From contig CDMY01000668.1 in assembly GCA_001179505.1 (NCBI GenBank), positions 1-33,789 of the forward strand: a stretch of 33,789 nt of DNA, read 5' to 3'. Below are positions 8,767 through 19,487 of the stretch, one piece after another (position 1 is the stretch's first letter; every line of letters begins with the position of its first letter). The notes under the pieces were generated by a model that worked only from the letters and a program-made list of their open reading frames with translations, did not search any database and was not told where the DNA came from. The position numbers and the translations under genes were made by a program. Origin of the DNA: Vitrella brassicaformis CCMP3155 (lineage: Eukaryota > Protista > Chromerida).

Positions 8767-11084
8767 TCATGCCGACTTCACCTACAGAGCACACACGCAT
8801 CTATTTAGTCAGAAATCAATCCCTCGATTCATCGACGTGTCTCTGCCTTCCCCTCGGTACCTCACCTGGTAGACGGCGATCTCCTTTGCGGTGAAGTACC
8901 AGTCTCCCGCCAGTGTGCCGCTGTCGCCGCTGAACCGGCCGAGGTAGCCGTTGTCGGGCAAGTCCTCCGTCTTGACGAAATGCCCCATGCTGCGCACGTC
9001 GTCTGACGGGCCGGGGCTGGCCAAGGCAAACCACAGATACCCGTGGCCAATGTTCATCTGCACACAGACATGCGAATTGACCCACAGATGACTGTGGCTG
9101 TTCTCGTTCGCCCCTCATCAACCCACCTTGCCGCGGATATCCTCATTGGTGGATTGGATGGAGGCGTCGCGGCCGGCGACCTGCACCTTCTGTTTGGCCT
9201 TGGGGATGGGCACCTTGGTGACTTTGCCGTAGGCTCCGCTGATCGAGATGAAGAAGTGGGGCGCGGGGTATTCATTGGTCTGTGTGGGGTCGGTGGCCGG
9301 CTTGAGTTGGCCGTCCACAAAGGCGCCGAATCGGTGTGTGTCATTGTTGTTGACGAGGAACAGCAGACCGCTCGCATCGCCCACCTTGTCCAGCAGCTTG
9401 CCGAAGTCACCACCGTCACGCGTCGAACTGACAGAGAGCAAAGAGAACGGGGTGGGAGGGACACTGCGAGAGATCAGATGCTCATCTCTGCTTACCTGTA
9501 GAGGAGTTTGATCGAGGGGCTGGGTATCTTGGTCATGGCCAGCACCTCACGCGTCTCCTCGAAGGTGAGCAGTGGGGCCGGGGGCCGATAGATGTCCTCC
9601 ATCTTGAGGCCATACATCTCAACATCCTTCTGCACACACACACAGGTTGAGTGCATGGCCGCCTTGATGAAGTCATGTGTGGACGGATCAGCCATACCTT
9701 CAGCTGAGCGATATACTTGGGCTTGGCTGTGGGCTTCTTGACCACGGCACCGGGCCGCTTCTCGAGTGAAGTGGTTCGCTGGCGGCGGGCAAAATCCACC
9801 ACCTGAATGGCAGCCAGAAGGACTTGCAATATGACCTTCTCTCTCTCTCTCTCTCTCTCTCCCCTCTTGTGTGTGCGTCGTGGTTGTGTGTCACCTTTGT
9901 GAAGTGCTCAACGGATGTCTGCCGGATCGGTACGTCGCCCTGCACAATCTCACCGCTGCACACCACACACACAAGAGAGGAATGAACACAATGCACCCCT
10001 CAAATCGAAGTCTGTATGGTGCTTGGTGCATTCCCACCTGAATCGTTTGTAGAGGAGGTTGTCGGGGCCGAGCTGCGATAGCGTCGCCTCGGTGGTCGAC
10101 ACCTTCTTGCGCAGGACGGCTACGGTCTTCACCTCGTGGGCGCCGCCGTCCTCTGCTCGGAGAAAGGACCCCATCGCCCTCCCGAATCCCTCCAAATGTA
10201 CTACCGCCTTCTCCAGCACCGCCACCGCATCGTTGTAGCTATCCAAGTACTCACGCAGCCGACTGCCGGCAGTCTCCTCCCCGCTGCTACCTCCTGCCCC
10301 CTCTCCATCGCCCCCCTCGCCGTCGCCGCCCTTCTTGTTGCCCTCCGCCGCCTCTCTGTCGTCTATATCTGTGTCGTCTGATCGCACGTCGATCTCGAGC
10401 GATGTCGGGGTGAGGAACAGCTCGTGGTAGAAGGCGAACGAAGGGTCCTCCTTCTGTGTGTCGTCCAGCTCGATCTCGTGCTCCTCAGCTGAGGAGTCAG
10501 CACACTCAACCAAAGCTATCTCGTCAGACAACCTGAAGAGCGCCAAGGAGAGCAAAGGCAAAGCGCAATGAACACAACCCAATCAGACGTGCATTCCCTT
10601 TTCATTCGACCTACCACTTGATATGGTTGAAGTCAGCGTCGACGAAGGGCCGGCCCTCCTCATCGCGGGGCAGGGCGTCCACGCAGTACAGCAGCAGATG
10701 GGCGAACTAGGTGCGGCGGAGCTGATCCATCAACAGCCCCTTGCGCGACACACCCACCACCCGGCCGCCCACATTGACCTCCACCTCCCCCTCGATGCCG
10801 CCCGTCAGCTCCAACTTGCCGCCTGTGCTCTCAATCAGCTGTTTGATGGCCTCGGCTTTGCTCTGCAGCTGCTGACGGGCACTCCTGGCGGCATTCTCGA
10901 TGGCGAGGAGGGCGGCGCTGGCTGCGGCGATGGCCTTGTCGAGTGACTGACGGCCGATCTGAGGCGTGGGACGGTGGCGCTGAGCATCCGATGGCTGGCC
11001 AGCTGCGTCAACAGCATCACCGTTAATCGCCTTCCGCTTCTTCGAGCTGCCTGTTGCTGCTGCCACAGCGGCGGCTGCCGACAT
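8767..11084 (-). pseudogene. Tandem BTB/POZ (KCTD-type) + TLDc protein, copy A, with in-frame nonsense codon
   Basis: BTB1 VEVNVGGRVVGVSRKGLL...PRDEEGRPFVD; BTB2 VSTTEATLSQLG..LLYKRF..HFTKVVDFARR..LKKDVEMYGL; TLDc KLLYSSTRDGGDFGKLLDKVG..LLFLV..HRFGAFVDG..AKEIAVYQ. Terminal mini-exon VKSA* at 8781-8767. TAG at 10709-10707, where copy B has TAC (Tyr). Confidence 0.85.
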
Positions 11085-11399: not shown

Positions 11400-14300
11400 A
11401 TGCAGCAGCCAACCGTTGAGCAACCATCGGCAGCGGATGGAGGCCAGGCAGCTACCGAAAGGGACAGATCGGCTGAGGTGGCGTGTCTGGACGGCGGGCA
11501 GCTGACCATGCATAACGAAGCCATCACGGGAGGCCAGACACCACACACATCAGGTACGGACACACAGCAGAGCTGCTTCTGTATCAGATAATAGCTGGTT
11601 CTTATGTGTTGATTCACCATCTGCAGAAGCAGCAACGTCCGATGCCGGAAAGGGCAAGGCTCGCCACAGGCACGAGCACCAGTCGAGTGTGGCGGCCGTC
11701 GACTCTCGATCGTCATCCCCACACTCACCACGAAGGCGCAAGGCAGCCAAGAGTGATGGTGCGTCGGTGTCTGCCGGTGATGTGTGGTCGTCCATCTGTA
11801 TGTCTGACCCCCAGTGGGCCGCCGACAGAGACAGCAAGGCCGGCAGCAAGGGGAAGACCGTCATCACCAAATCGGGTGAGGAGACCAAGAGGCGAATCCA
11901 ACACACCGCTGCAACCGATTGATTATGTGTGGTACCAACTGCAGTGCATCAGTCTGACGTGGTGGGAGTTTGTTGGCACAACGAGAGGCAGGCCTGGCAG
12001 ACAACGTGGTACGAGAAGAACGAACGAAAGACACAGTTTTTCTACGTCAGCGAGCATGGCTATGACAGAGCCAAGGTGCGCACAACGTCCCCTCTCCCCC
12101 TGAGTCTCTCCATTGTGCATCCGTCCGTCAGGCGTTGGCCGAGCAGCATCGTTGTGAGCTGGAGCGCACCGGTCGGGCGGCGGTCAAGAAGCGAGCGGAG
12201 CACCAGAGCGGCGTCAGGGGCGTCCACTACCACAAGGGCAGCAACGCATGGGTGGCCTCATGGCAGGAGGGCGGCAGACAGAGGAAGGAGAAGAAGCTTT
12301 CTGTGCGGCAGCTGGGCTATGAGGGCGCCAAGCGGGCCGCCATCTCCCACAGACGGAAGATGGAGAAACGACACCACGAGTATCGAGTGGCCGCGTCTCC
12401 ACCGCCCCCGTCATTCGAGCTGGATGATGACAGTCGTCCACCGATCCGCCCCACCAAGCGGCGACGCAAGGACACAATGGATCACAGCAGCACTGCTGAT
12501 GACACCCAACCGACCGACAGCAATGGGCAGCCAGCCGACGAGTCGGCCAGTGACATCGCTCGGCTTGACACGACGTGTGATGCGGCTGCGCTGGCCGTTT
12601 TGCTGGAGGGTGTGCGTGCGAGCGATCCTGGGAGTGGCGGTCGGTATGAGATCGTCACAGTGACGGTGGCCGGCCAGCAGACGAGGGCCATTCGGTGGAG
12701 GCCAACAGGTGCGTCTCACTCGTCCGTTCACTGACTGCCGTCCATTGGTGTGTGTGTGTGGTTACAGGTGTGGATGTGCCGTCTGATGGGCGAGTGACTG
12801 CCCAGGCCATGAGGGCGGGGCGGCCTCCCAGAGAGGAGAGGAGCGATTGGCCACTTCCCCTCCCCCACGCCGAGGCATCGACGGCAGCGCATCGCAATAA
12901 CGGTGAGCCAGACAGCACTTAGACGCCAGATTGGGTACACACAGCCTCCCACACGCCCTCTTCTGGCTGTCTGGCTGTGTGTCAATTGACTCCGGGTGCA
13001 CCGACCCAGAGGAGCGGCACACGCCAAGCAGCTCTGTCGATGGGCATGGCGGCCATGACGGCCGTGTGGCCTCGGCTGCCCGCAGCCCCCATCCCAAGCT
13101 GTGCGGCCCAGCCGGCCGTCAGGTGGCGGGAGAACTGACGGGCAATGCGCTGGCTCGCGCACTGGTGCGGTGGATGAGGGACCAGCAGCCGGGCGAGCTC
13201 CATGCACTAGACAGGGGAGGGTGAGCATGACATAGGTCATGACACTGTCACGTCACTTGTGCATCTGCGTGTGTCATATCTGTGTCAGTATCGGCATCTC
13301 GTGGCGGACCAACTACAGTTGTGAGGCTTACTTCTGGGACAGCGACGCATCGACGGCCGTCGATCTGCGTCAGTTTCCCGTCGGCCACGGCGCTTCCCCC
13401 GCGGCCATCTTCACGGCCTTTCGTGAGGCCGTCGAGTACCGCAATGCGCTCCACCGGTCGCGTGTGGGCGATCGGGCAATGCTCATCGATCTGTCGTGGC
13501 TGCAGCGAGCACAGCAGGGGCAGGGGCAAGGCGGCGTCCCTGGTGTCCCTCCCAACCGCAACAGTCATCTGTACGGGGGCAGCAACCGCAGCAAGAGGCC
13601 CAGGCTCGACCCACCGTTGGACCCCCCTCTCTGTCCCCGCCCTGCCCCGGCCGCCGCTCCTCATCTCCCGGCCCGCCCCCCTATGAGTCGACAGGGCGAC
13701 GCGACACTGGGCCGACGTGCCCGGCAGAGGAGCATCGTGGCTCGGGCGGCCCGCCAGTCTGATGACGGCAGCCGCTCACCGTCTCCCCAGCCACGACGGA
13801 GGCGCAAGGCGGCCAAGAGGGATGGTGCGTCGGTGTCTGCCGGTGATGTGCTGTCGTCCATCGGTATGTCTGACCCCCAGTGGACCCCCAACAGAGACAG
13901 CAAGGCCGGCAGCAAGGGGAAGACTGTCATCACCAAACCCGGTGAGGAAACCAACAAGCGAATTCAACGCAACAGCGCAACCCGATTGATTATGTGTGGT
14001 ACCAACTGCAGAGCATCAGTCTGACGTGGTGGGAGTTTGTTGGTCCAGCGCGATGCAGGCCTGGAGGGCATTGTGGTACGAGAAGGGCGACTCGAAGAAG
14101 CAGAAGTGCTTCTACGTCAAAGACCATGGCTTCGACACAGCCAAGGTGCGAACCACGTCCCCTCTTGCCCTCTCCCTCTGAGTGTCTCATATGTGTGCTT
14201 CCATCTATCAGGCGTTGGCGGAGGAGCATCGTCGTGAGCTGGAGCGCACCGGACGGGCGTCGGTGAGGAAGCTATCAAAGCACCAGAGCGGCGTCAAGGG

Positions 14301-14489
14301 CGTGTGGTACGACAAGGCGAACAATTGCTGGATGGCCAGCTGGCAGGAGGGCGGCAAAGAGAAGAGAAGCCCTTCTCAATCGCTGAGCTGGGCTATGAGG
14401 GTGCCAAGCAGGCCGCCATTGGACATCGCCGGGCGATGGAGGCGAAGCATTACAGATACCACAACAAGAGAGAGACGGCCGCCGAGTGA
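11400..14489 (+). CDS. ApiAP2-type multi-AP2-domain protein (4 clear AP2 domains + 1 divergent AP2-like), frameshift in last domain
   Basis: AP2 motifs HQSDVVGVCWHNERQAWQTTWYE..FYVSEHGYDRAKALAEQHR, HQSGVRGVHYHKGSNAWVASWQE..LSVRQLGYEGAKRAAISHR, and a duplicated pair at ~14009-14460. GT-AG introns (e.g. 11876-11944, 12076-12131) restore frame. A 1-nt frame break at ~14362-14367 separates GGKEK from KPFSIAELGYEGAKQAAIGHRR. The start could be 11319. Confidence 0.85.
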
Positions 14490-14550
14490 GTGACAGAGGC
14501 ATAGAGGGAAGGATTGAGGGAGGGAGAGAGCGAGGGAGAGAGCGAGGGAG

Positions 14551-14610
14551 AGGTGGGGCCGTCTGACGGATCTAAGACTTAGGTGGGGCCGTCTGACGGA
14601 TCTAAGACTT
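14551..14610. repeat. Perfect 30-bp tandem duplication
   Basis: aggtggggccgtctgacggatctaagactt x2, directly after a short (gagggagagagc) repeat and ~90 bp before the gap. Confidence 0.95.
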
Positions 14611-14702
14611 ATGGCATTCTATACGTCTGAGGGAGATGGGGGGGGTCGGGTCTTCCTTAGGGAGAAATGCGGACCACTGCACACATGGCATTCGGCTTTT
14701 TT

Positions 14703-15002
14703 NNNNNNNNNNNNNNNNNNNNNNNNNNNNNNNNNNNNNNNNNNNNNNNNNNNNNNNNNNNNNNNNNNNNNNNNNNNNNNNNNNNNNNNNNNNNNNNNNN
14801 NNNNNNNNNNNNNNNNNNNNNNNNNNNNNNNNNNNNNNNNNNNNNNNNNNNNNNNNNNNNNNNNNNNNNNNNNNNNNNNNNNNNNNNNNNNNNNNNNNNN
14901 NNNNNNNNNNNNNNNNNNNNNNNNNNNNNNNNNNNNNNNNNNNNNNNNNNNNNNNNNNNNNNNNNNNNNNNNNNNNNNNNNNNNNNNNNNNNNNNNNNNN
15001 NN
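14703..15002. other. Assembly gap (300 N)
   Basis: Run of N. Confidence 1.
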
Positions 15003-15538
15003 GACGTTCGTCACTCACTCGCTCACTCAGTGGTCTCCGTGACCAGAATGGGCATTTATCTATCGGGGAATGGGTGACACATACACTACACCTCGGCTTC
15101 CCTCAGATCCCTTCCTGTGTTTTTTCTGCTCCCTTTTGATGTGGTGATGGTTCCTGTTGGTTGGCATTGCATTGGTCGTTGTCGTGTTGCGGTTGGCTGG
15201 CCGGGTGACTGACTGGCCGCCTGACCTGATCGATGCTCCCTCTCTCTGTGTGTCTGCTGCATTGCATGTGTCGTATTGGTCAGCCATGCAAAGCCATCTG
15301 ACACAAACGGGACACGCCCCTTACTTGGCCACTTTGGCCATTCGTAAACTATCCCATATAAGTTTCGAGGAAGAGAACCACCCGAACCACCTGAAAGGAG
15401 AGGATCATGCTGGGACACGGGACTCTTCCGCATTATATTCATTCTCCTTGTCCCGGCCCTCCCAGTCTGTTCAGTTGTTCCCTAAGTCCCTCCATCCCCC
15501 TCTCTCTGTTCAATCGCAAGACAACTTCGTGACACAAG

Positions 15539-16230
15539 ATGAAGGACATCGAGTCAGGCGTCAAGGTGCGAGAGCGCGCGGCTTCCGAGACCACCGACAA
15601 AGGCCTGGCACACGGCCACCACAAGTTCCCCGTCGTGGCCGTTGTGGCGCTCGCCGCCATTGCTGTGGCCGTGGCTGGACTGGTCGTGGGAGCCGTTGCC
15701 CTGCAGAAAGCCGTCTTCAAGGAGACTGCCACGGACGGCGTGGTGAGTGGAGTGCATGGCAGATCTATCGAATACAGACAGGGAGGGGGAGGAGGGCAAG
15801 GTGTGTGTCGATGACTGTCTGTCTGTCTGGTTGTGTGTGTTTGGTGTGTGCAGATGGTGCACATGACGGCCGGAGCGGACGATCAGCATCGAGTCCTGCA
15901 GGCTTTGTGCATGGCCAACCGCATGGTAAGCACATGAAAGAGCCGCTGTGCAAAATTGAGCGTATGTGTGTGTGTGTGTGTGTGTGTGTGCAGGTCGACG
16001 CGGGCAAGGACGTGATTGTCTTCTGCGATGTCGACTGCCCCCCGCTGATGGCCAAGACTGCCGAGGACTTCACTGTCGAGGAGGCCCCTTGTGTGGCCGA
16101 CACATCCAAGAGTGGTCTAATTGACAAGCTGGTGGCCAGGGGGGTGCCGATCTCTGTGTGCCCGGGGTGCGTCGCCAAACACGGCCTCTCGATGGAGGAC
16201 CTCAGAGACGGTGTTGACGAGGTGACCAGC

Positions 16231-16261
<31 letters not shown>

Positions 16262-16380
16262 GGGAGGGAGGGAGGGAGGAGTGCATCATCGATGACACAC
16301 GCGTGTGTGTGTGTGTGCAGCACGACGCCAACGAGTTCTTCGCGTTCACGGAAGGGCGGATGCTCCATTTCGACTACTGA
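15539..16380 (+). CDS. DsrE/DsrF-like family protein with N-terminal transmembrane anchor (187 aa)
   Basis: Exons 15539-15742, 15854-15925, 15994-16221 and 16321-16380, all GT-AG and phase 0. Protein: TM segment FPVVAVVALAAIAVAVAGLVVGAVAL, then MVHMTAGADDQHRVLQALCMA..GKDVIVFCD..LVARGVPISVCPGCVAKHGLSMEDLRDGV..FFAFTEGRMLHFDY*. This matches my recollection of bacterial DsrE-like proteins (HxTxGxDDxHR start, CPxC, short xxDY C-terminus). Confidence 0.8.
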
Positions 16381-17466
16381 CTGATTGCACAGCCCAGCCA
16401 GCCGCGTGTGTTGCGTTGGGTGGCTCTCTTTCTTCTATGCGTGTCAGTCGTGTGAGCCACCCTCTCTCCCTCCCACACAGCGTTTCTAATGTGCTCTTTT
16501 TGGTGTCTGTCTGTCTGCGTGTGTGTGCCTATACGGATGGCCGGCCATTGTGGCGCGGCGCGTGTGGATATGGGGTGGGTGCGTCAGTCACTCACTCAGC
16601 CAGGGGTGCACTGCGGCACAGGGGCGTGTGCGACCGAGTGACAGCTTCCTTTGTCCATCGCCCATTCGCAGAGGGGCTGTGTGCTTGGGCGATGGACGGC
16701 ATGTGACACGTGTGTGTGTGTGTGTGTGTGTGTGCCCTTTATCGTATGCGCGTTGTGTGTATCCTTGCTCTTTTTATACTTATATGTATGTGGATTACAT
16801 CACCTGTCATGGCGCTTCATGTGGGTCTGTGGCTGCCATGCTATGCGTGTGGCGCGTTTTCCGTCCGCAGGACAGATCGACGGATGGGCCACTTTGTGTG
16901 GTGTGGGTGTGGGTGTGGTGTGTTGTGTGCCCATGCGGTCGTGTGCATGCTGCAAGGATGGATGGATGGATGGATTGGATTGCTCGGTGAGAGTGAGTGG
17001 GTGCATGATGGACAATACGATTGCTGTACATATGAAACCATTCGAACTCCCGCAGCGCCACACCCCACACATTCATGCCACCAGGCGGCCAGACCACCAA
17101 AACAACCAAATACGGCTCTGCATGCCTGCCCATCGATGGTGAATGCAATATGTCAATGTATTGTGTGACTGGTCGGCTCGACAACAGAAGAGAGAGAGAA
17201 AGGGCATTGAAGTCTGTTTGATTGAAACCGTCCATAAGGATTTCGCTTTGCGTGAATCGAGCCATCCTTGGAGCCATCCATCCGTCCAGCAAGACAAACA
17301 CATCGCATACACACGGATGAGTCGTTCCACACAAGGACCACCGACAGCAGCAAGGAACACATTGGCGCCAACACGCCATTGCAGCTCACATGCAGCACAC
17401 CCTTTGCTATACATCGCACTTCTCTCTTCCATACTACGTCTTGTTTGCTTGGATGTCTCTCGTTGA

Positions 17467-17912
17467 TCATGCCATGAGGGTCACGCCGTTCTTGCAGTCG
17501 CGGGGCGTGGTAGCGGCAGTCGACGAGCCCGACACACACGAGGCCTTGGAGTACTGCACCACAGCCTTGGCGCCAACCTGAACCAAAAGAACACATCAAC
17601 AAAGAATGCATTGCAAAACGACACATTTATGGCCACCGCATCCACGCCCCGCCTGTGTGGATGTACCTGGCTGATGTCCGTGTCGATATCCTTGATCTCC
17701 TTGACCTTCTTGCCATCCTCACCGTTGCATGCGCAGCCGTCCTTCTCGGCACCGTTCGTCGCCGTCACCTTCACCAGCAGGGCATTGCGGCGCTTCATGA
17801 TGGTAGATCCGGCTATGGGGCCCAGCGTGATGTCGGTGCGGTGCAGCGACGGGTTGAGCCGCGAGTACGTGGGGATGTGGGGCGTCAGCGGACTCGCACA
17901 CTCAGCCGCCAT
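17467..17912 (-). CDS. Small hypothetical protein (~118 aa, 2 exons)
   Basis: Exon 17912-17667 (MAAECASPLTPHIPTYSRLNP...KEIKDIDTDISQ) plus GT-AG intron plus exon 17577-17467 (VGAKAVVQYSK...TLMA*). No family recognised. Confidence 0.55.
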
Positions 17913-18425
17913 CGGTGCTGTGGGTAGCTGTGGGGCGAATGCAGAGCCAGACAGATGGGAACCAACGTAAGTCGATAGGAGGGAGCGAAAGCAGCGAAAA
18001 GGGACACAATTGAACCGCGAGAATGTCGAGCCCCACTGGCACTTCGTCGCCTTTTTGTCTCGACTTTCAAGCTCGCGCGAATCTCCTGTCCGCAGATCTT
18101 CTGTTACCGTGCTGTTCTCGACACCTGTGGAATCCAATCGGTGCCTTTCACGAAATGTTCATGTCTTTCACGTGCAGGAGGTGACGGCCAAGTTGGCCGT
18201 TGAGCAATGCAGTGGACGCATCGTTCTAAGCGAGAGGTGTGATGGATTGGTTTTGGATCAAAATTGAGACACTCATGCAGACAGACACAGATGAATCAAA
18301 CGGTCCAGCCGCCCATGCACACCAGTCCATCCAAGCAGCACATAAGTCGGTCTGTCGATTTGTGTGTGAGGCCATACATGTCTGCCGCTGGTGTCGTCGC
18401 ACTGGCTCCTCCTCTTCTCACTCAC

Positions 18426-19487
18426 TCAGCCCGACTTCACCTGCAGAGCACGCAGACATCCATAGATTCATGCGTGTCGGTCGTGTCTCTGCCTTCCCCA
18501 CCCACCCCACCTACTCACGTGATAGATGGCGATCTCCTTTGCATTGCAGTACCAGTCTCCCGCCAGTGTGCCGTCGCCGTTGTCGTGTGTCACTCCCAGG
18601 TAGCTCGCCGGCAGGTCCTCCTTCGCCACCCACTGATACATGCTGCGCACGTCATCCGCGGGGCCTGGGCTGCCGTCGCAGAGCCACAGATACCCACAGC
18701 CAATGGCCATCTGCACACAGGAACAGCCGTGTCCTGTTCGTGCTGCTTTGTTCTTCGCTTTGCCCCTCATCAACCCACCTTGCCGCGCTTGTTCGCATTG
18801 CCGACCTTGATGGATGCGTCGCGGCCGGCCACCATCACCTTCTGTCTGGCCGTGGGGATGGGCACCTTGGTTGGCGGAGAGTACGCACCGCTGATCGAGA
18901 TGAGGAAGTGCGGCACCCTGTATCCATTGGTCTGTGTGGGGTCGGCGGGCGGCTTGAGTTGGCCGTCGACAAAGACGCCGAATCGGTATGTGTCGTTGTG
19001 GTTGATGAGGAACAGCAGACCGCTCGCATCGCCCACCTTGTCCACCATCGTGCCGAAGTCACCACCGTCACGCGTCGAACTGACAGAGAGCAAAGAGAAC
19101 GGGGTGAGAGTGACACTGCGAGAGATCATATGGCTGTCTCTGCTTACCTGTAGAGGAGTTTGGTCGAGGGGTTGGGTATCTTGGTAGCACCTCCTGCGTC
19201 TCCTCGAAGGTGAGGAAGGGGGCCGGGGGCCGATGGATGTCCTCCATCTTGAGGCCATACATCTCAACATCCTTCTGCACACACACACAGACACACACAC
19301 ACACAGGTTGAGTGCATGGCCGCCTTGATGAAGTCATGTGTGAACAGATAAGCCATACCTTCAGCTGAGCGATGTACCTGGGCTTGGCCGAGGGCTTCTT
19401 GACCAGGGCACCGGGCCGCTTCTCTTGTCGAAGGCGGCGAGCAAAGTCCACCACCTGAATGGCCGCCAGAAGGACTTGCAGTGTGCC

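What the first reader, a model, noticed from the sequence alone, without database searches (positions are those of the whole stretch)
15539..16380. Bacterial-type DsrE/DsrF-like gene with three spliceosomal introns and a membrane anchor
Seen: a clean 4-exon, 187-aa ORF with CPGC at 16159-16170, additional Cys residues and an N-terminal TM helix. Established: DsrE/DsrF-like domains are mainly prokaryotic sulfur-relay or redox proteins with a reactive Cys. Inference: horizontally acquired and then intronised, possibly giving a membrane-tethered persulfide/thiol-redox function not expected in this lineage. The family assignment is from memory of the sequence pattern.
Basis: partly seen in the sequence, partly recalled or inferred. 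Interest (0 to 1): 0.7.

Follow-up and report, generated by a model that had tools for sequence, protein, structure and literature searches.

The report
Bacterial-derived membrane-anchored DsrE-fold gene in Vitrella
This is a real, expressed four-exon gene of the alga Vitrella brassicaformis that encodes a membrane-anchored protein with a DsrE-type fold and a CPGC cysteine motif; its only detectable relatives are exported bacterial proteins, so it looks like a bacterial gene that was acquired, given introns and duplicated, which is a tidy but not very surprising case.

Summary
The exons are 15539-15742, 15854-15925, 15994-16221 and 16321-16380 (+). They give 187 aa through three phase-0 GT-AG introns. 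CPGC lies at 16159-16170, and a 26-residue membrane helix sits in exon 1. A transcript contig shows all three junctions.

The genome is Vitrella brassicaformis CCMP3155. Three paralogues on other contigs have introns at the same positions.

The DsrE assignment holds at fold and superfamily level:
- An AlphaFold model (pLDDT 92) matches solved DsrE-like structures at Z 12-14.5.
- A family profile hits PDB 3mc3 at 1.8e-9.
- Pfam DsrE itself is below threshold for the Vitrella proteins (14.3-22.5 bits against a cut-off of 22.7).

All relatives found outside Vitrella are bacterial or metagenomic proteins of about 150 aa. They have signal or lipoprotein leaders, a nearly invariant CPxC and a C-terminal GRILTLDY motif. 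They occur in at least 270 species genomes across many phyla. No other eukaryotic protein turned up. Trees nest Vitrella inside the bacteria, but the donor is unresolved.

Horizontal transfer followed by intron gain and duplication is therefore well supported. The gene is not a DsrEFH/TusBCD sulfur-relay member: it has no partner genes, and it is exported rather than cytoplasmic. A thiol or persulfide function on the non-cytosolic face is only inferred.

UniProt already names two paralogues "DsrE/DsrF-like". This scan had no earlier DsrE note.

The parts
15404..15538 (+). 5' untranslated region, at least this long. It contains an upstream ORF at 15407-15532 (41 codons).
   Evidence: Transcript contig L001 positions 1-347 align to window 15404-15742. 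The upstream ORF is listed.
15539..15742 (+). Exon 1 (68 aa). It encodes a conserved hydrophilic tail (residues 1-29, with AHGHHK), a membrane helix (residues 30-55, nt 15626-15703) and a short linker ending in TDGV.
   Evidence: Translation, hydropathy. The tail is conserved in all four paralogues.
15743..15853 (+). Intron 1, 111 nt, GTGAGT...GCAG, phase 0.
   Evidence: The junction ggcgtg|at is seen in L001. Paralogues have an intron at the same position.
15854..15925 (+). Exon 2 (24 aa): first strand and first helix of the DsrE-fold domain.
   Evidence: L001 is 100% identical over this block. Secondary structure from the model.
15926..15993 (+). Intron 2, 68 nt, GTAAGC...GCAG, phase 0, with (TG)13 at 15965-15990.
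   Evidence: The junction is spliced in L001 and in P0001.
15994..16221 (+). Exon 3 (76 aa): the core of the domain. It carries FCDVDC and the CPGC motif at 16159-16170, at the start of a helix.
   Evidence: CPxC is nearly invariant in the family. The model has a strand at residues 77-79 and a helix at 81-86.
16222..16320 (+). Intron 3, 99 nt, GTGACC...GCAG, phase 0. It is in frame and free of stops, with (CA)14 at 16231-16258 and a (TG)n tract at its 3' end.
   Evidence: It is spliced out in L001 and P0001.
16321..16380 (+). Exon 4 (19 aa plus stop): the C-terminal FFAFTEGRMLHFDY motif of the family.
   Evidence: The family consensus is FFxFTxGRILTLDY, with Y as the last residue in 56 of 61 bacterial rows.

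Best explanation
This is a genuine, transcribed Vitrella brassicaformis gene, one of four paralogues. It encodes a single-pass membrane protein with three parts: a 29-residue conserved hydrophilic tail, a 26-residue signal-anchor helix, and a 119-residue DsrE-fold domain. The domain belongs to a distinct, uncharacterised bacterial subfamily of about 150 aa. Members of that subfamily are exported by a Sec or lipoprotein leader, carry an almost invariant CPxC at the start of a helix, and end in GRILTLDY. The most likely history is transfer of one such bacterial gene into the Vitrella lineage. The leader was then turned into, or replaced by, a signal anchor with an N-terminal extension. Three phase-0 spliceosomal introns were gained, and the gene then duplicated into four copies. 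The window copy and P0002 come from a recent segmental duplication, and both are under purifying selection. The inferred mechanism is that the domain faces the non-cytosolic side (secretory lumen or cell exterior), as in the bacterial periplasm. There it would use the first Cys of CPGC, which aligns with TusD Cys78, together with the second Cys for thiol-disulfide or persulfide exchange. Shown here: the gene structure, expression, fold, family, distribution and nesting in bacteria. Inferred: topology, chemistry and substrates. The confidence of 0.72 is a blend: about 0.9 for structure, family and bacterial origin, and about 0.35 for the thiol or persulfide mechanism.
For: Gene and splicing.
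Organism and paralogues.
Fold: the AF2 model has pLDDT 91.9 and pTM 0.86. The top 12 Foldseek hits are all DsrE-like structures. VIA-align gives Z 14.5 for 3mc3, 13.8 for YchN and 12.2 for TusD, against 4.8 or less for unrelated chains. The ESM Atlas gives TM 0.91 to bacterial DsrE clusters.
Sequence: the A2 profile against the PDB gives 3mc3 at 1.8e-9, 3pnx at 3.6e-5 and YchN at 7.9e-5. 63 of 65 family members hit Pfam DsrE.
Distribution: there are 206 representatives at E<=1e-3, and the best one outside Vitrella scores 4.5e-24. The word-index profile search gives 1119 hits, and the top 120 are all bacterial or metagenomic. 270 bacterial species genomes across many phyla carry a relative. The Vitrella-only profile finds no other eukaryotic protein.
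Export in bacteria: 182 of 197 relatives have an N-terminal hydrophobic leader and 91 have a lipobox-like motif.
Nesting: the Vitrella clade has support 99, lies at least 13 nodes deep when rooted on distant members, and its sister is always bacterial.
CPxC: 57-60 of 61 bacterial rows have it, and 13 have exactly CPGC. hhalign places the first Cys on TusD Cys78.
Selection: in exons 2-4, 7 synonymous against 2 non-synonymous codon differences between the two youngest copies; introns 2 and 3 are only 75% identical.
Context hints for thiol chemistry: thioredoxin, thioredoxin-reductase-like and 1-Cys peroxiredoxin neighbours in 4-5 loci each; one locus has a DsbD-thioredoxin fusion and two rhodaneses.
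Literature: DsrE-like domains with a CGxC motif are regarded as redox-active (PMC5322559), and a DsrE-like selenoprotein is listed among homologues of thiol oxidoreductases (PMC1794560).
Against: Pfam DsrE is below its gathering score for every Vitrella protein: 15.2, 14.3, 17.9 and 22.5 bits against 22.7. Sequence-level membership therefore rests on a transitive link through the bacterial family.
The hhalign alignment to TusD is not significant on its own (E 0.28).
The sister lineage changes with sampling. It is a Verrucomicrobiales MAG plus P0005 in the 167-row tree and P0034 in the 75-row tree. The AU test does not decide between them (p 0.19). The alignment has only 118 columns and the Vitrella branch is long.
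Most hits come from metagenomes without taxon labels, so a eukaryotic origin of some weak hits cannot be excluded.
Bacterial gene neighbourhoods are not conserved. No neighbour family occurs in more than about 12 of 84 loci, and metal-related neighbours (ZIP, Nramp, FUR, TonB receptors) are about as frequent as thiol-redox ones.
Topology is not settled by flanking charges, which are 2+/2- on each side.
No biochemical data exist for any member of the subfamily.
Confidence: 0.72

Rival explanations
1. The CPGC motif, perhaps together with the His-rich tail (AHGHHK), binds a metal ion. The protein would then act in metal handling rather than thiol or sulfur transfer.
For: Neighbours of bacterial relatives include ZIP transporters (3 loci plus Mycolicibacterium alvei), Nramp and FUR (L095), TonB-dependent receptors (7 loci) and NifX-like Nitro_FeMo-Co proteins (9-12 loci). 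The HGHH tail is conserved in all four paralogues. CxxC is a common metal-binding motif (general knowledge).
Against: None of these neighbours is present in more than about 12 of 84 loci. The His-rich tail is absent from the bacterial relatives and lies on the other side of the membrane from the CPGC domain. No DsrE-fold protein that I know of is a characterised metal chaperone; this rests on memory and was not tested.
Confidence: 0.15
2. The protein is a peroxide-reducing enzyme, as the automatic IMG label 'predicted peroxiredoxin' for the bacterial relatives suggests.
For: The JGI name appears on many homologues. 1-Cys peroxiredoxin, thioredoxin and thioredoxin-reductase-like genes lie next to some relatives.
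Against: The fold is DsrE-like, not the thioredoxin fold of peroxiredoxins. The label is an automatic COG-style name with no experiment behind it that I could find. A neighbouring true peroxiredoxin argues as much for a partner role as for the same activity.
Confidence: 0.08
3. The gene is an ancient eukaryotic gene, vertically inherited or derived from an endosymbiont, that was lost nearly everywhere else. It would then not be a lineage-specific transfer from bacteria.
For: The introns, four paralogues and host-like base composition show long residence in the genome. Cyanobacterial relatives exist (Phormidium, Floridaenema). The sister lineage is unresolved.
Against: No other eukaryotic protein was found, although the databases include EukProt and MMETSP. 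The Vitrella clade sits deep inside a bacterial radiation and not with the cyanobacteria.
Confidence: 0.07
4. The protein is a classical cytoplasmic sulfur-relay subunit of the DsrEFH/TusBCD type, working with partner subunits and TusA or DsrC.
For: It has the same fold (Z 12.2 to TusD, 12.3 to DsrH). A Cys aligns with TusD Cys78.
Against: It has a membrane anchor, and the bacterial relatives have signal peptides. No DsrF/H, TusB/C or TusA genes lie next to it or next to 84 bacterial relatives. The second Cys of CPxC and the GRILTLDY tail are not features of TusD.
Confidence: 0.03
5. The locus is bacterial contamination or an assembly artefact.
For: The nearest relatives are bacterial.
Against: The gene has three spliceosomal introns carrying the genome's typical (TG)n/(CA)n tracts. 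Spliced transcripts exist. Four diverged paralogues lie on four contigs among eukaryotic genes such as TLD, Ank and LRAT.
Confidence: 0.01

Closest known systems
Uncharacterised bacterial exported 'DsrE family protein' / 'predicted peroxiredoxin' subfamily (for example P0005, the Verrucomicrobiales MAG locus L014, and the Mycolicibacterium alvei protein P0269)
   Same: 30-43% identity over the whole 119-residue domain. Shared features are the CPxC motif, the conserved H3 and D36, the C-terminal FFxFTxGRILTLDY ending in Tyr, and an extracytoplasmic address.
   Different: The Vitrella proteins have a 29-residue tail plus a true membrane helix in place of a cleavable or lipoprotein leader. They also have an extra Cys (C39, where bacteria have A or G), three introns, and the ending MLHFDY instead of ILTLDY.
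Sulfolobus solfataricus DsrE/DsrF-like protein, PDB 3mc3
   Same: It is the best solved match by profile (E 1.8e-9) and by structure (Z 14.5, rmsd 2.4 over 105 residues). The first Cys of CPGC aligns with its Cys.
   Different: It has no second Cys (VCVQS) and no leader or anchor. It is archaeal and its function is unknown.
E. coli YchN, PDB 1jx7
   Same: DsrE fold (TM 0.71, Z 13.8). It has a CxxC (CKTC) at the same position as CPGC.
   Different: It is cytoplasmic, lacks the Pro in the motif and lacks the GRILTLDY tail. Identity is about 17-18%. Its function is unknown.
DsrE of DsrEFH (2hy5) and TusD of TusBCD (2d1p), the persulfide-relay subunits
   Same: Same fold (Z about 12). The first Cys of CPGC falls on TusD Cys78 in the hhalign alignment.
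   Different: These proteins are cytoplasmic hetero-hexamers with F/H or B/C partners encoded alongside, and they have a single active Cys. None of this applies here.
DsrE-like domain of YedF (CGxC) and the DsrE-like selenoprotein
   Same: A DsrE-like domain with a CxxC-type motif that the authors regard as redox-active (PMC5322559, PMC1794560).
   Different: YedF is a cytoplasmic fusion with a SirA/TusA-like domain and is linked to selenium. No such fusion or linkage is seen here. Direct similarity was not tested.

Membership tests
DsrE-like fold superfamily (Pfam PF02635 DsrE and relatives) | Score at or above the Pfam gathering threshold for PF02635 | tested here: not met
   P0001 scores 15.2 bits, P0002 14.3, P0003 17.9 and P0004 22.5, against a cut-off of 22.7. 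Exon 3 alone scores 15 bits. Indirectly, 63 of 65 members of the family alignment hit PF02635 at E<=0.01, the best at 2.9e-11.
DsrE-like fold superfamily (Pfam PF02635 DsrE and relatives) | Three-dimensional fold matches solved DsrE-like proteins over the whole domain | tested here: met
   The model has pLDDT 91.9. The top 12 Foldseek hits are all DsrE-like. Z is 10.9-14.5 for ten DsrE-like entries and 4.8 or less for others.
DsrE-like fold superfamily (Pfam PF02635 DsrE and relatives) | Significant profile-to-sequence similarity to solved family members | tested here: met
   The A2 profile gives 3mc3 at 1.8e-9, 3pnx at 3.6e-5, 1jx7 at 7.9e-5 and 2pd2 at 1.3e-4.
DsrE-like fold superfamily (Pfam PF02635 DsrE and relatives) | Conserved Cys at the strand-to-helix turn, equivalent to Cys78 of DsrE/TusD | tested here: met
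   C80 of the domain aligns with the Cys of 3mc3 and YchN and with TusD Cys78 (though that alignment has E 0.28 on its own). That Cys78 is the active residue is taken from the literature as I remember it.
DsrEFH / TusBCD sulfur-relay complexes | Partner subunits (DsrF/H, TusB/C) or TusA/DsrC encoded alongside | tested here: not met
   The window has only this one copy. Neighbours of 84 bacterial relatives contain no such genes among the recurrent families.
DsrEFH / TusBCD sulfur-relay complexes | Soluble cytoplasmic protein | tested here: not met
   The Vitrella protein has a membrane helix at residues 30-55, and 182 of 197 bacterial relatives have leaders.
Exported CPxC / GRILTLDY DsrE subfamily (defined here from alignment A2) | CPxC motif, H3, D36, G97, F109 and a C-terminal aromatic residue, over the full domain length | tested here: met
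   All of these are present in the window protein. E-values to members reach 4.5e-24 over profile positions 1-119.
Thioredoxin-fold thiol-disulfide oxidoreductases | Thioredoxin fold around a CxxC at the N-terminus of a helix | tested here: not met
   The CxxC does sit at a helix start, but no thioredoxin-fold protein is among the structural matches above background.
Horizontally acquired bacterial gene resident in a eukaryotic genome | Nearest relatives are bacterial, the eukaryotic clade is nested among them, and there are no other eukaryotic homologues | tested here: met
   Two caveats apply: many hits are unlabelled metagenomic proteins, and the donor is unresolved.
Horizontally acquired bacterial gene resident in a eukaryotic genome | Integrated in the host genome: introns, host flanks and expression | tested here: met

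The most novel reading that the evidence does not exclude
The Vitrella genes and their bacterial relatives (found in at least 270 species genomes) would represent an unrecognised class of extracytoplasmic thiol-disulfide or persulfide-handling proteins. These would be built on the DsrE fold rather than the thioredoxin fold, with CPxC as the active site. Vitrella would have recruited one as a membrane-anchored lumenal or surface redox factor that has no counterpart in other eukaryotes.
Probability: 0.25. Interest if true: 0.55.

Novelty: new member of a known kind. Interest (0 to 1): 0.35.

Why it matters
The locus is a clean, well-documented example of a bacterial gene becoming a normal eukaryotic gene in a chromerid, the photosynthetic relatives of apicomplexan parasites. 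The gene acquired three introns, its export signal was reworked into a membrane anchor, it expanded to four copies, and it remains under purifying selection. It also draws attention to a widespread bacterial subfamily of exported DsrE-fold proteins with an invariant CPxC motif that nobody appears to have characterised. The practical value is modest. It could serve as a marker for studies of gene transfer and intron gain in Vitrella, and it points to a possible non-thioredoxin periplasmic redox or sulfur carrier. It does not touch a long-standing open question, and public databases already carry the family name for two of the paralogues.

Tried and rejected
- Pfam and NCBIfam on single exons gave only a weak DsrE hit (E 0.028) and nothing in NCBIfam. 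NCBIfam also has no model for the bacterial relatives.
- phmmer of exon 3 against the PDB gave only weak hits to YchN and MTH1491, at E 0.5-0.8.
A 9-row subset worked.
Splicing therefore rests on assembled transcript contigs, not on read counts.
- The literature search for 'DsrE' plus 'Vitrella' returned only DsRed false matches. 'DsrE/YchN/CxxC' was likewise swamped by DsRed.
- Contamination was rejected (introns, paralogues, spliced transcripts).
- A classical Dsr/Tus relay role was rejected (no partner genes; the protein is exported).
- I tried to name the donor lineage. Two trees disagree (Verrucomicrobiales MAG against P0034), and the AU test does not decide, so I name no donor.
- Gene-neighbourhood clustering of 84 bacterial loci gave no dominant partner.
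Exons were searched by reference. The database protein P0001 (equal to exons 2-4) and the 97-98% identical paralogue P0002 stood in for it.
- The full-length protein, with its membrane helix, was not folded.

Full report
**What is there.**
The stretch 15539-16380 on the + strand holds a four-exon gene.
- Exon 1, 15539-15742, gives 68 aa.
- Exon 2, 15854-15925, gives 24 aa.
- Exon 3, 15994-16221, gives 76 aa.
- Exon 4, 16321-16380, gives 19 aa and a stop.

The three introns are 111, 68 and 99 nt long. All begin with GT, end with AG and lie between codons. Residues 30-55 of exon 1 are a very hydrophobic 26-residue stretch, with a 19-mer Kyte-Doolittle maximum of 3.05. A charged 29-residue tail precedes it. 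This looks like a signal anchor, not a cleavable signal peptide.

**Is the model real?**
A word-index search with exon 3 found four proteins. I used the stop-free read-through of intron 3 as the length carrier for that search. Three of the four are named Vitrella brassicaformis CCMP3155, so the window comes from this chromerid alga. The fourth, P0001 (119 aa, JGI), is letter for letter exons 2+3+4 joined as predicted.

P0001 comes from a 1204-nt JGI contig, L001, that has no introns. L001 aligns to the window in four blocks that break at the predicted junctions. The exon 1/2 junction is read on both sides of a scaffold gap of N.

Paralogues P0003 and P0004 also have intron-free transcript contigs. 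Their genomic copies have introns at the same three positions.

**Paralogues.**
Four copies sit on four contigs. The window copy and P0002 (CDMY01000538.1) belong to a segmental duplication of at least 4.2 kb that is 83% identical overall. Within it the exons are 95-98% identical, while introns 2 and 3 are 75% identical. In exons 2-4, seven codon differences are synonymous and two are not. Both copies are therefore under purifying selection. No second copy lies in the window.

**Family.**
Pfam DsrE (PF02635) is the only family that recurs for these proteins, but it is always below the cut-off of 22.7 bits. The scores are 15.2, 14.3, 17.9 and 22.5 bits for P0001, P0002, P0003 and P0004.

An exhaustive HMMER search with the four Vitrella domains found 206 representatives at E<=1e-3. 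The best one outside Vitrella scored 4.5e-24 over the whole domain. These relatives are about 150 aa long, with the domain at the C-terminus. Aligned together (A2), they share H3, D36, C80-P81-x-C83, G97, F109 and a C-terminal FFxFTxGRILTLDY.

63 of the 65 aligned members hit Pfam DsrE. The A2 profile hits solved DsrE-like proteins: 3mc3 at 1.8e-9, 3pnx at 3.6e-5, YchN at 7.9e-5 and ST0148 at 1.3e-4.

An AlphaFold model of P0001 built with this alignment has pLDDT 91.9 and pTM 0.86. Its 12 best Foldseek matches are all DsrE-like structures. VIA-align gives Z 14.5 for 3mc3, 13.8 for YchN and 12.2 for TusD, dropping to 4.8 for unrelated folds. The ESM Atlas gives TM 0.91 to bacterial DsrE clusters, and its feature search agrees.

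The fold and superfamily assignment is therefore secure. Strict Pfam membership of the Vitrella sequences themselves is not met, and I say so in the membership table.

**Where the relatives live.**
The word-index search with the A2 profile gave 1119 hits at E<=1e-5. All of the 120 listed hits are bacterial or metagenomic, and none of them comes from EukProt or MMETSP. Where a source names them, the names are 'DsrE family protein' or 'predicted peroxiredoxin'.

A scan of one genome per species confirmed a relative in 270 genomes. The 80 best loci listed come from Bacteroidota, Ignavibacteriota, Planctomycetota, Verrucomicrobiota, Acidobacteriota, Kiritimatiellota, Desulfobacterota and Cyanobacteria.

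A search with the Vitrella-only profile returned only the four Vitrella proteins and three metagenomic ones. No other eukaryote shows up, although P0002-P0004 themselves are listed with EukProt, and two of them with MMETSP, as sources.

Of 197 bacterial-type relatives, 182 start with a hydrophobic leader and 91 have a lipobox-like motif. The ancestral protein was therefore exported. The Vitrella anchor continues that address.

**Trees.**
I built two trees.
- In a 167-row tree the four Vitrella rows form one clade (SH-aLRT 99). That clade is sister to a Verrucomicrobiales MAG plus P0005 (SH-aLRT 96). It lies at least 13 nodes deep when the tree is rooted on distant family members.
- In a 75-row careful tree the sister is P0034 (support 99/97). 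P0034 is a long-branched protein from another bacterial MAG.

An AU test does not reject the first arrangement (p 0.19). The alignment has only 118 columns. My conclusion is that the clade is nested in bacteria but the donor is unresolved. Together with the distribution, this supports transfer from bacteria. All paralogues share the three introns, so the introns were gained before the duplications.

**How it probably works.**
CPxC sits where a strand (residues 77-79) turns into a helix (81-86). It is present in 57-60 of the 61 bacterial rows, and 13 of them have exactly CPGC. Its first Cys aligns with the Cys of 3mc3 and YchN and with TusD Cys78 (although that alignment is weak on its own). 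From the literature as I remember it, Cys78 is the persulfide-carrying residue of TusD and DsrE. YchN has a CxxC at the same place.

[quoted passage not shown] They also list a DsrE-like selenoprotein among homologues of thiol oxidoreductases (PMC1794560).

Bacterial neighbourhoods are not conserved. Clustering the neighbours of 84 loci gave these recurrent families:
- NifX-like proteins in 9-12 loci;
- TonB receptors in 7;
- DUF134 in 6;
- thioredoxin-reductase-like proteins in 5;
- 1-Cys peroxiredoxin in 4;
- thioredoxin in 4;
- ZIP in 3;
- cytochrome bd in 3.

The P0034 locus has a DsbD-thioredoxin fusion, two rhodaneses, FUR and Nramp.

My best reading is a thiol-disulfide or persulfide carrier on the non-cytosolic face of a membrane. 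A metal-handling role is the main rival. None of this chemistry was tested. The protein is not a DsrEFH/TusBCD subunit, because there are no partner genes and the location is wrong.

**Novelty.**
UniProt already calls P0002 and P0003 'DsrE/DsrF-like family protein'. I found no paper on these genes. Gene transfer followed by intron gain is well known in algae, and other readers flagged further candidates in this genome. I class this as a new member of a known kind, of moderate-to-low interest. The more interesting loose end is the uncharacterised bacterial subfamily itself.

**Limits.**
Exons were used by reference, and P0001 and P0002 stood in for it.
- Many relatives are unlabelled metagenomic proteins.

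Noticed in passing
window 15160-19284, and 9118-9639: A segmental duplication. 15160-19284 matches the end of Vitrella contig CDMY01000538.1 (L002 9599-13804) at 83% identity. 9118-9639 matches L002 13281-13804 at 88%, which is a further copy of part of a TLD-domain gene.
   Followed up: partly
window 15407-15532: An upstream ORF of 41 codons lies inside the transcript-supported 5' UTR. It ends 7 nt before the main ATG.
   Followed up: no
window 16222-16320: Intron 3 is 99 nt, in frame and free of stops. It carries (CA)14 at its 5' end and a (TG)n tract at its 3' end. Intron 2 ends in (TG)13. Retention of intron 3 would add 33 residues without breaking the frame.
   Followed up: partly
window 15539-15625 (residues 1-29): The hydrophilic tail M.DIESG.KVRER.ASE.TDKGLAHGHHK is conserved in all four paralogues about as well as the catalytic domain. 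It has no counterpart in the bacterial relatives. It could be a sorting, phosphorylation or His-based metal site.
   Followed up: partly
window 15994-16221 (domain residues C35 and C39, FCDVDCPP): A second Cys pair is invariant in the four Vitrella proteins. At C39 the bacterial rows have A or G, and C35 is Cys in only 11 of 61. This may be a lineage-specific disulfide or an extra redox or metal site.
   Followed up: partly
L095 (bacterial MAG contig CAYXTV010000051.1) 86-5981: The relative P0034 sits in a compact cluster with a DsbD_TM-thioredoxin/peroxiredoxin fusion, DUF2202, two rhodaneses, FUR and Nramp. DUF2202 also lies near the Mycolicibacterium alvei copy (L012).
   Followed up: partly
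P0086 (Halodesulfovibrio spirochaetisodalis, 3318 aa): A giant VCBS/cadherin-like protein matched profile positions 51-113 in seven stretches at E 4e-9. It may be a repeat-driven chance match or a reused module.
   Followed up: no
window 14516-14611 and 14001-15000: The region just upstream of the gene has low G+C (0.41 against about 0.58 elsewhere). It contains a 12-nt repeat in 3 copies and a perfect 30-nt repeat in 2 copies.
   Followed up: no
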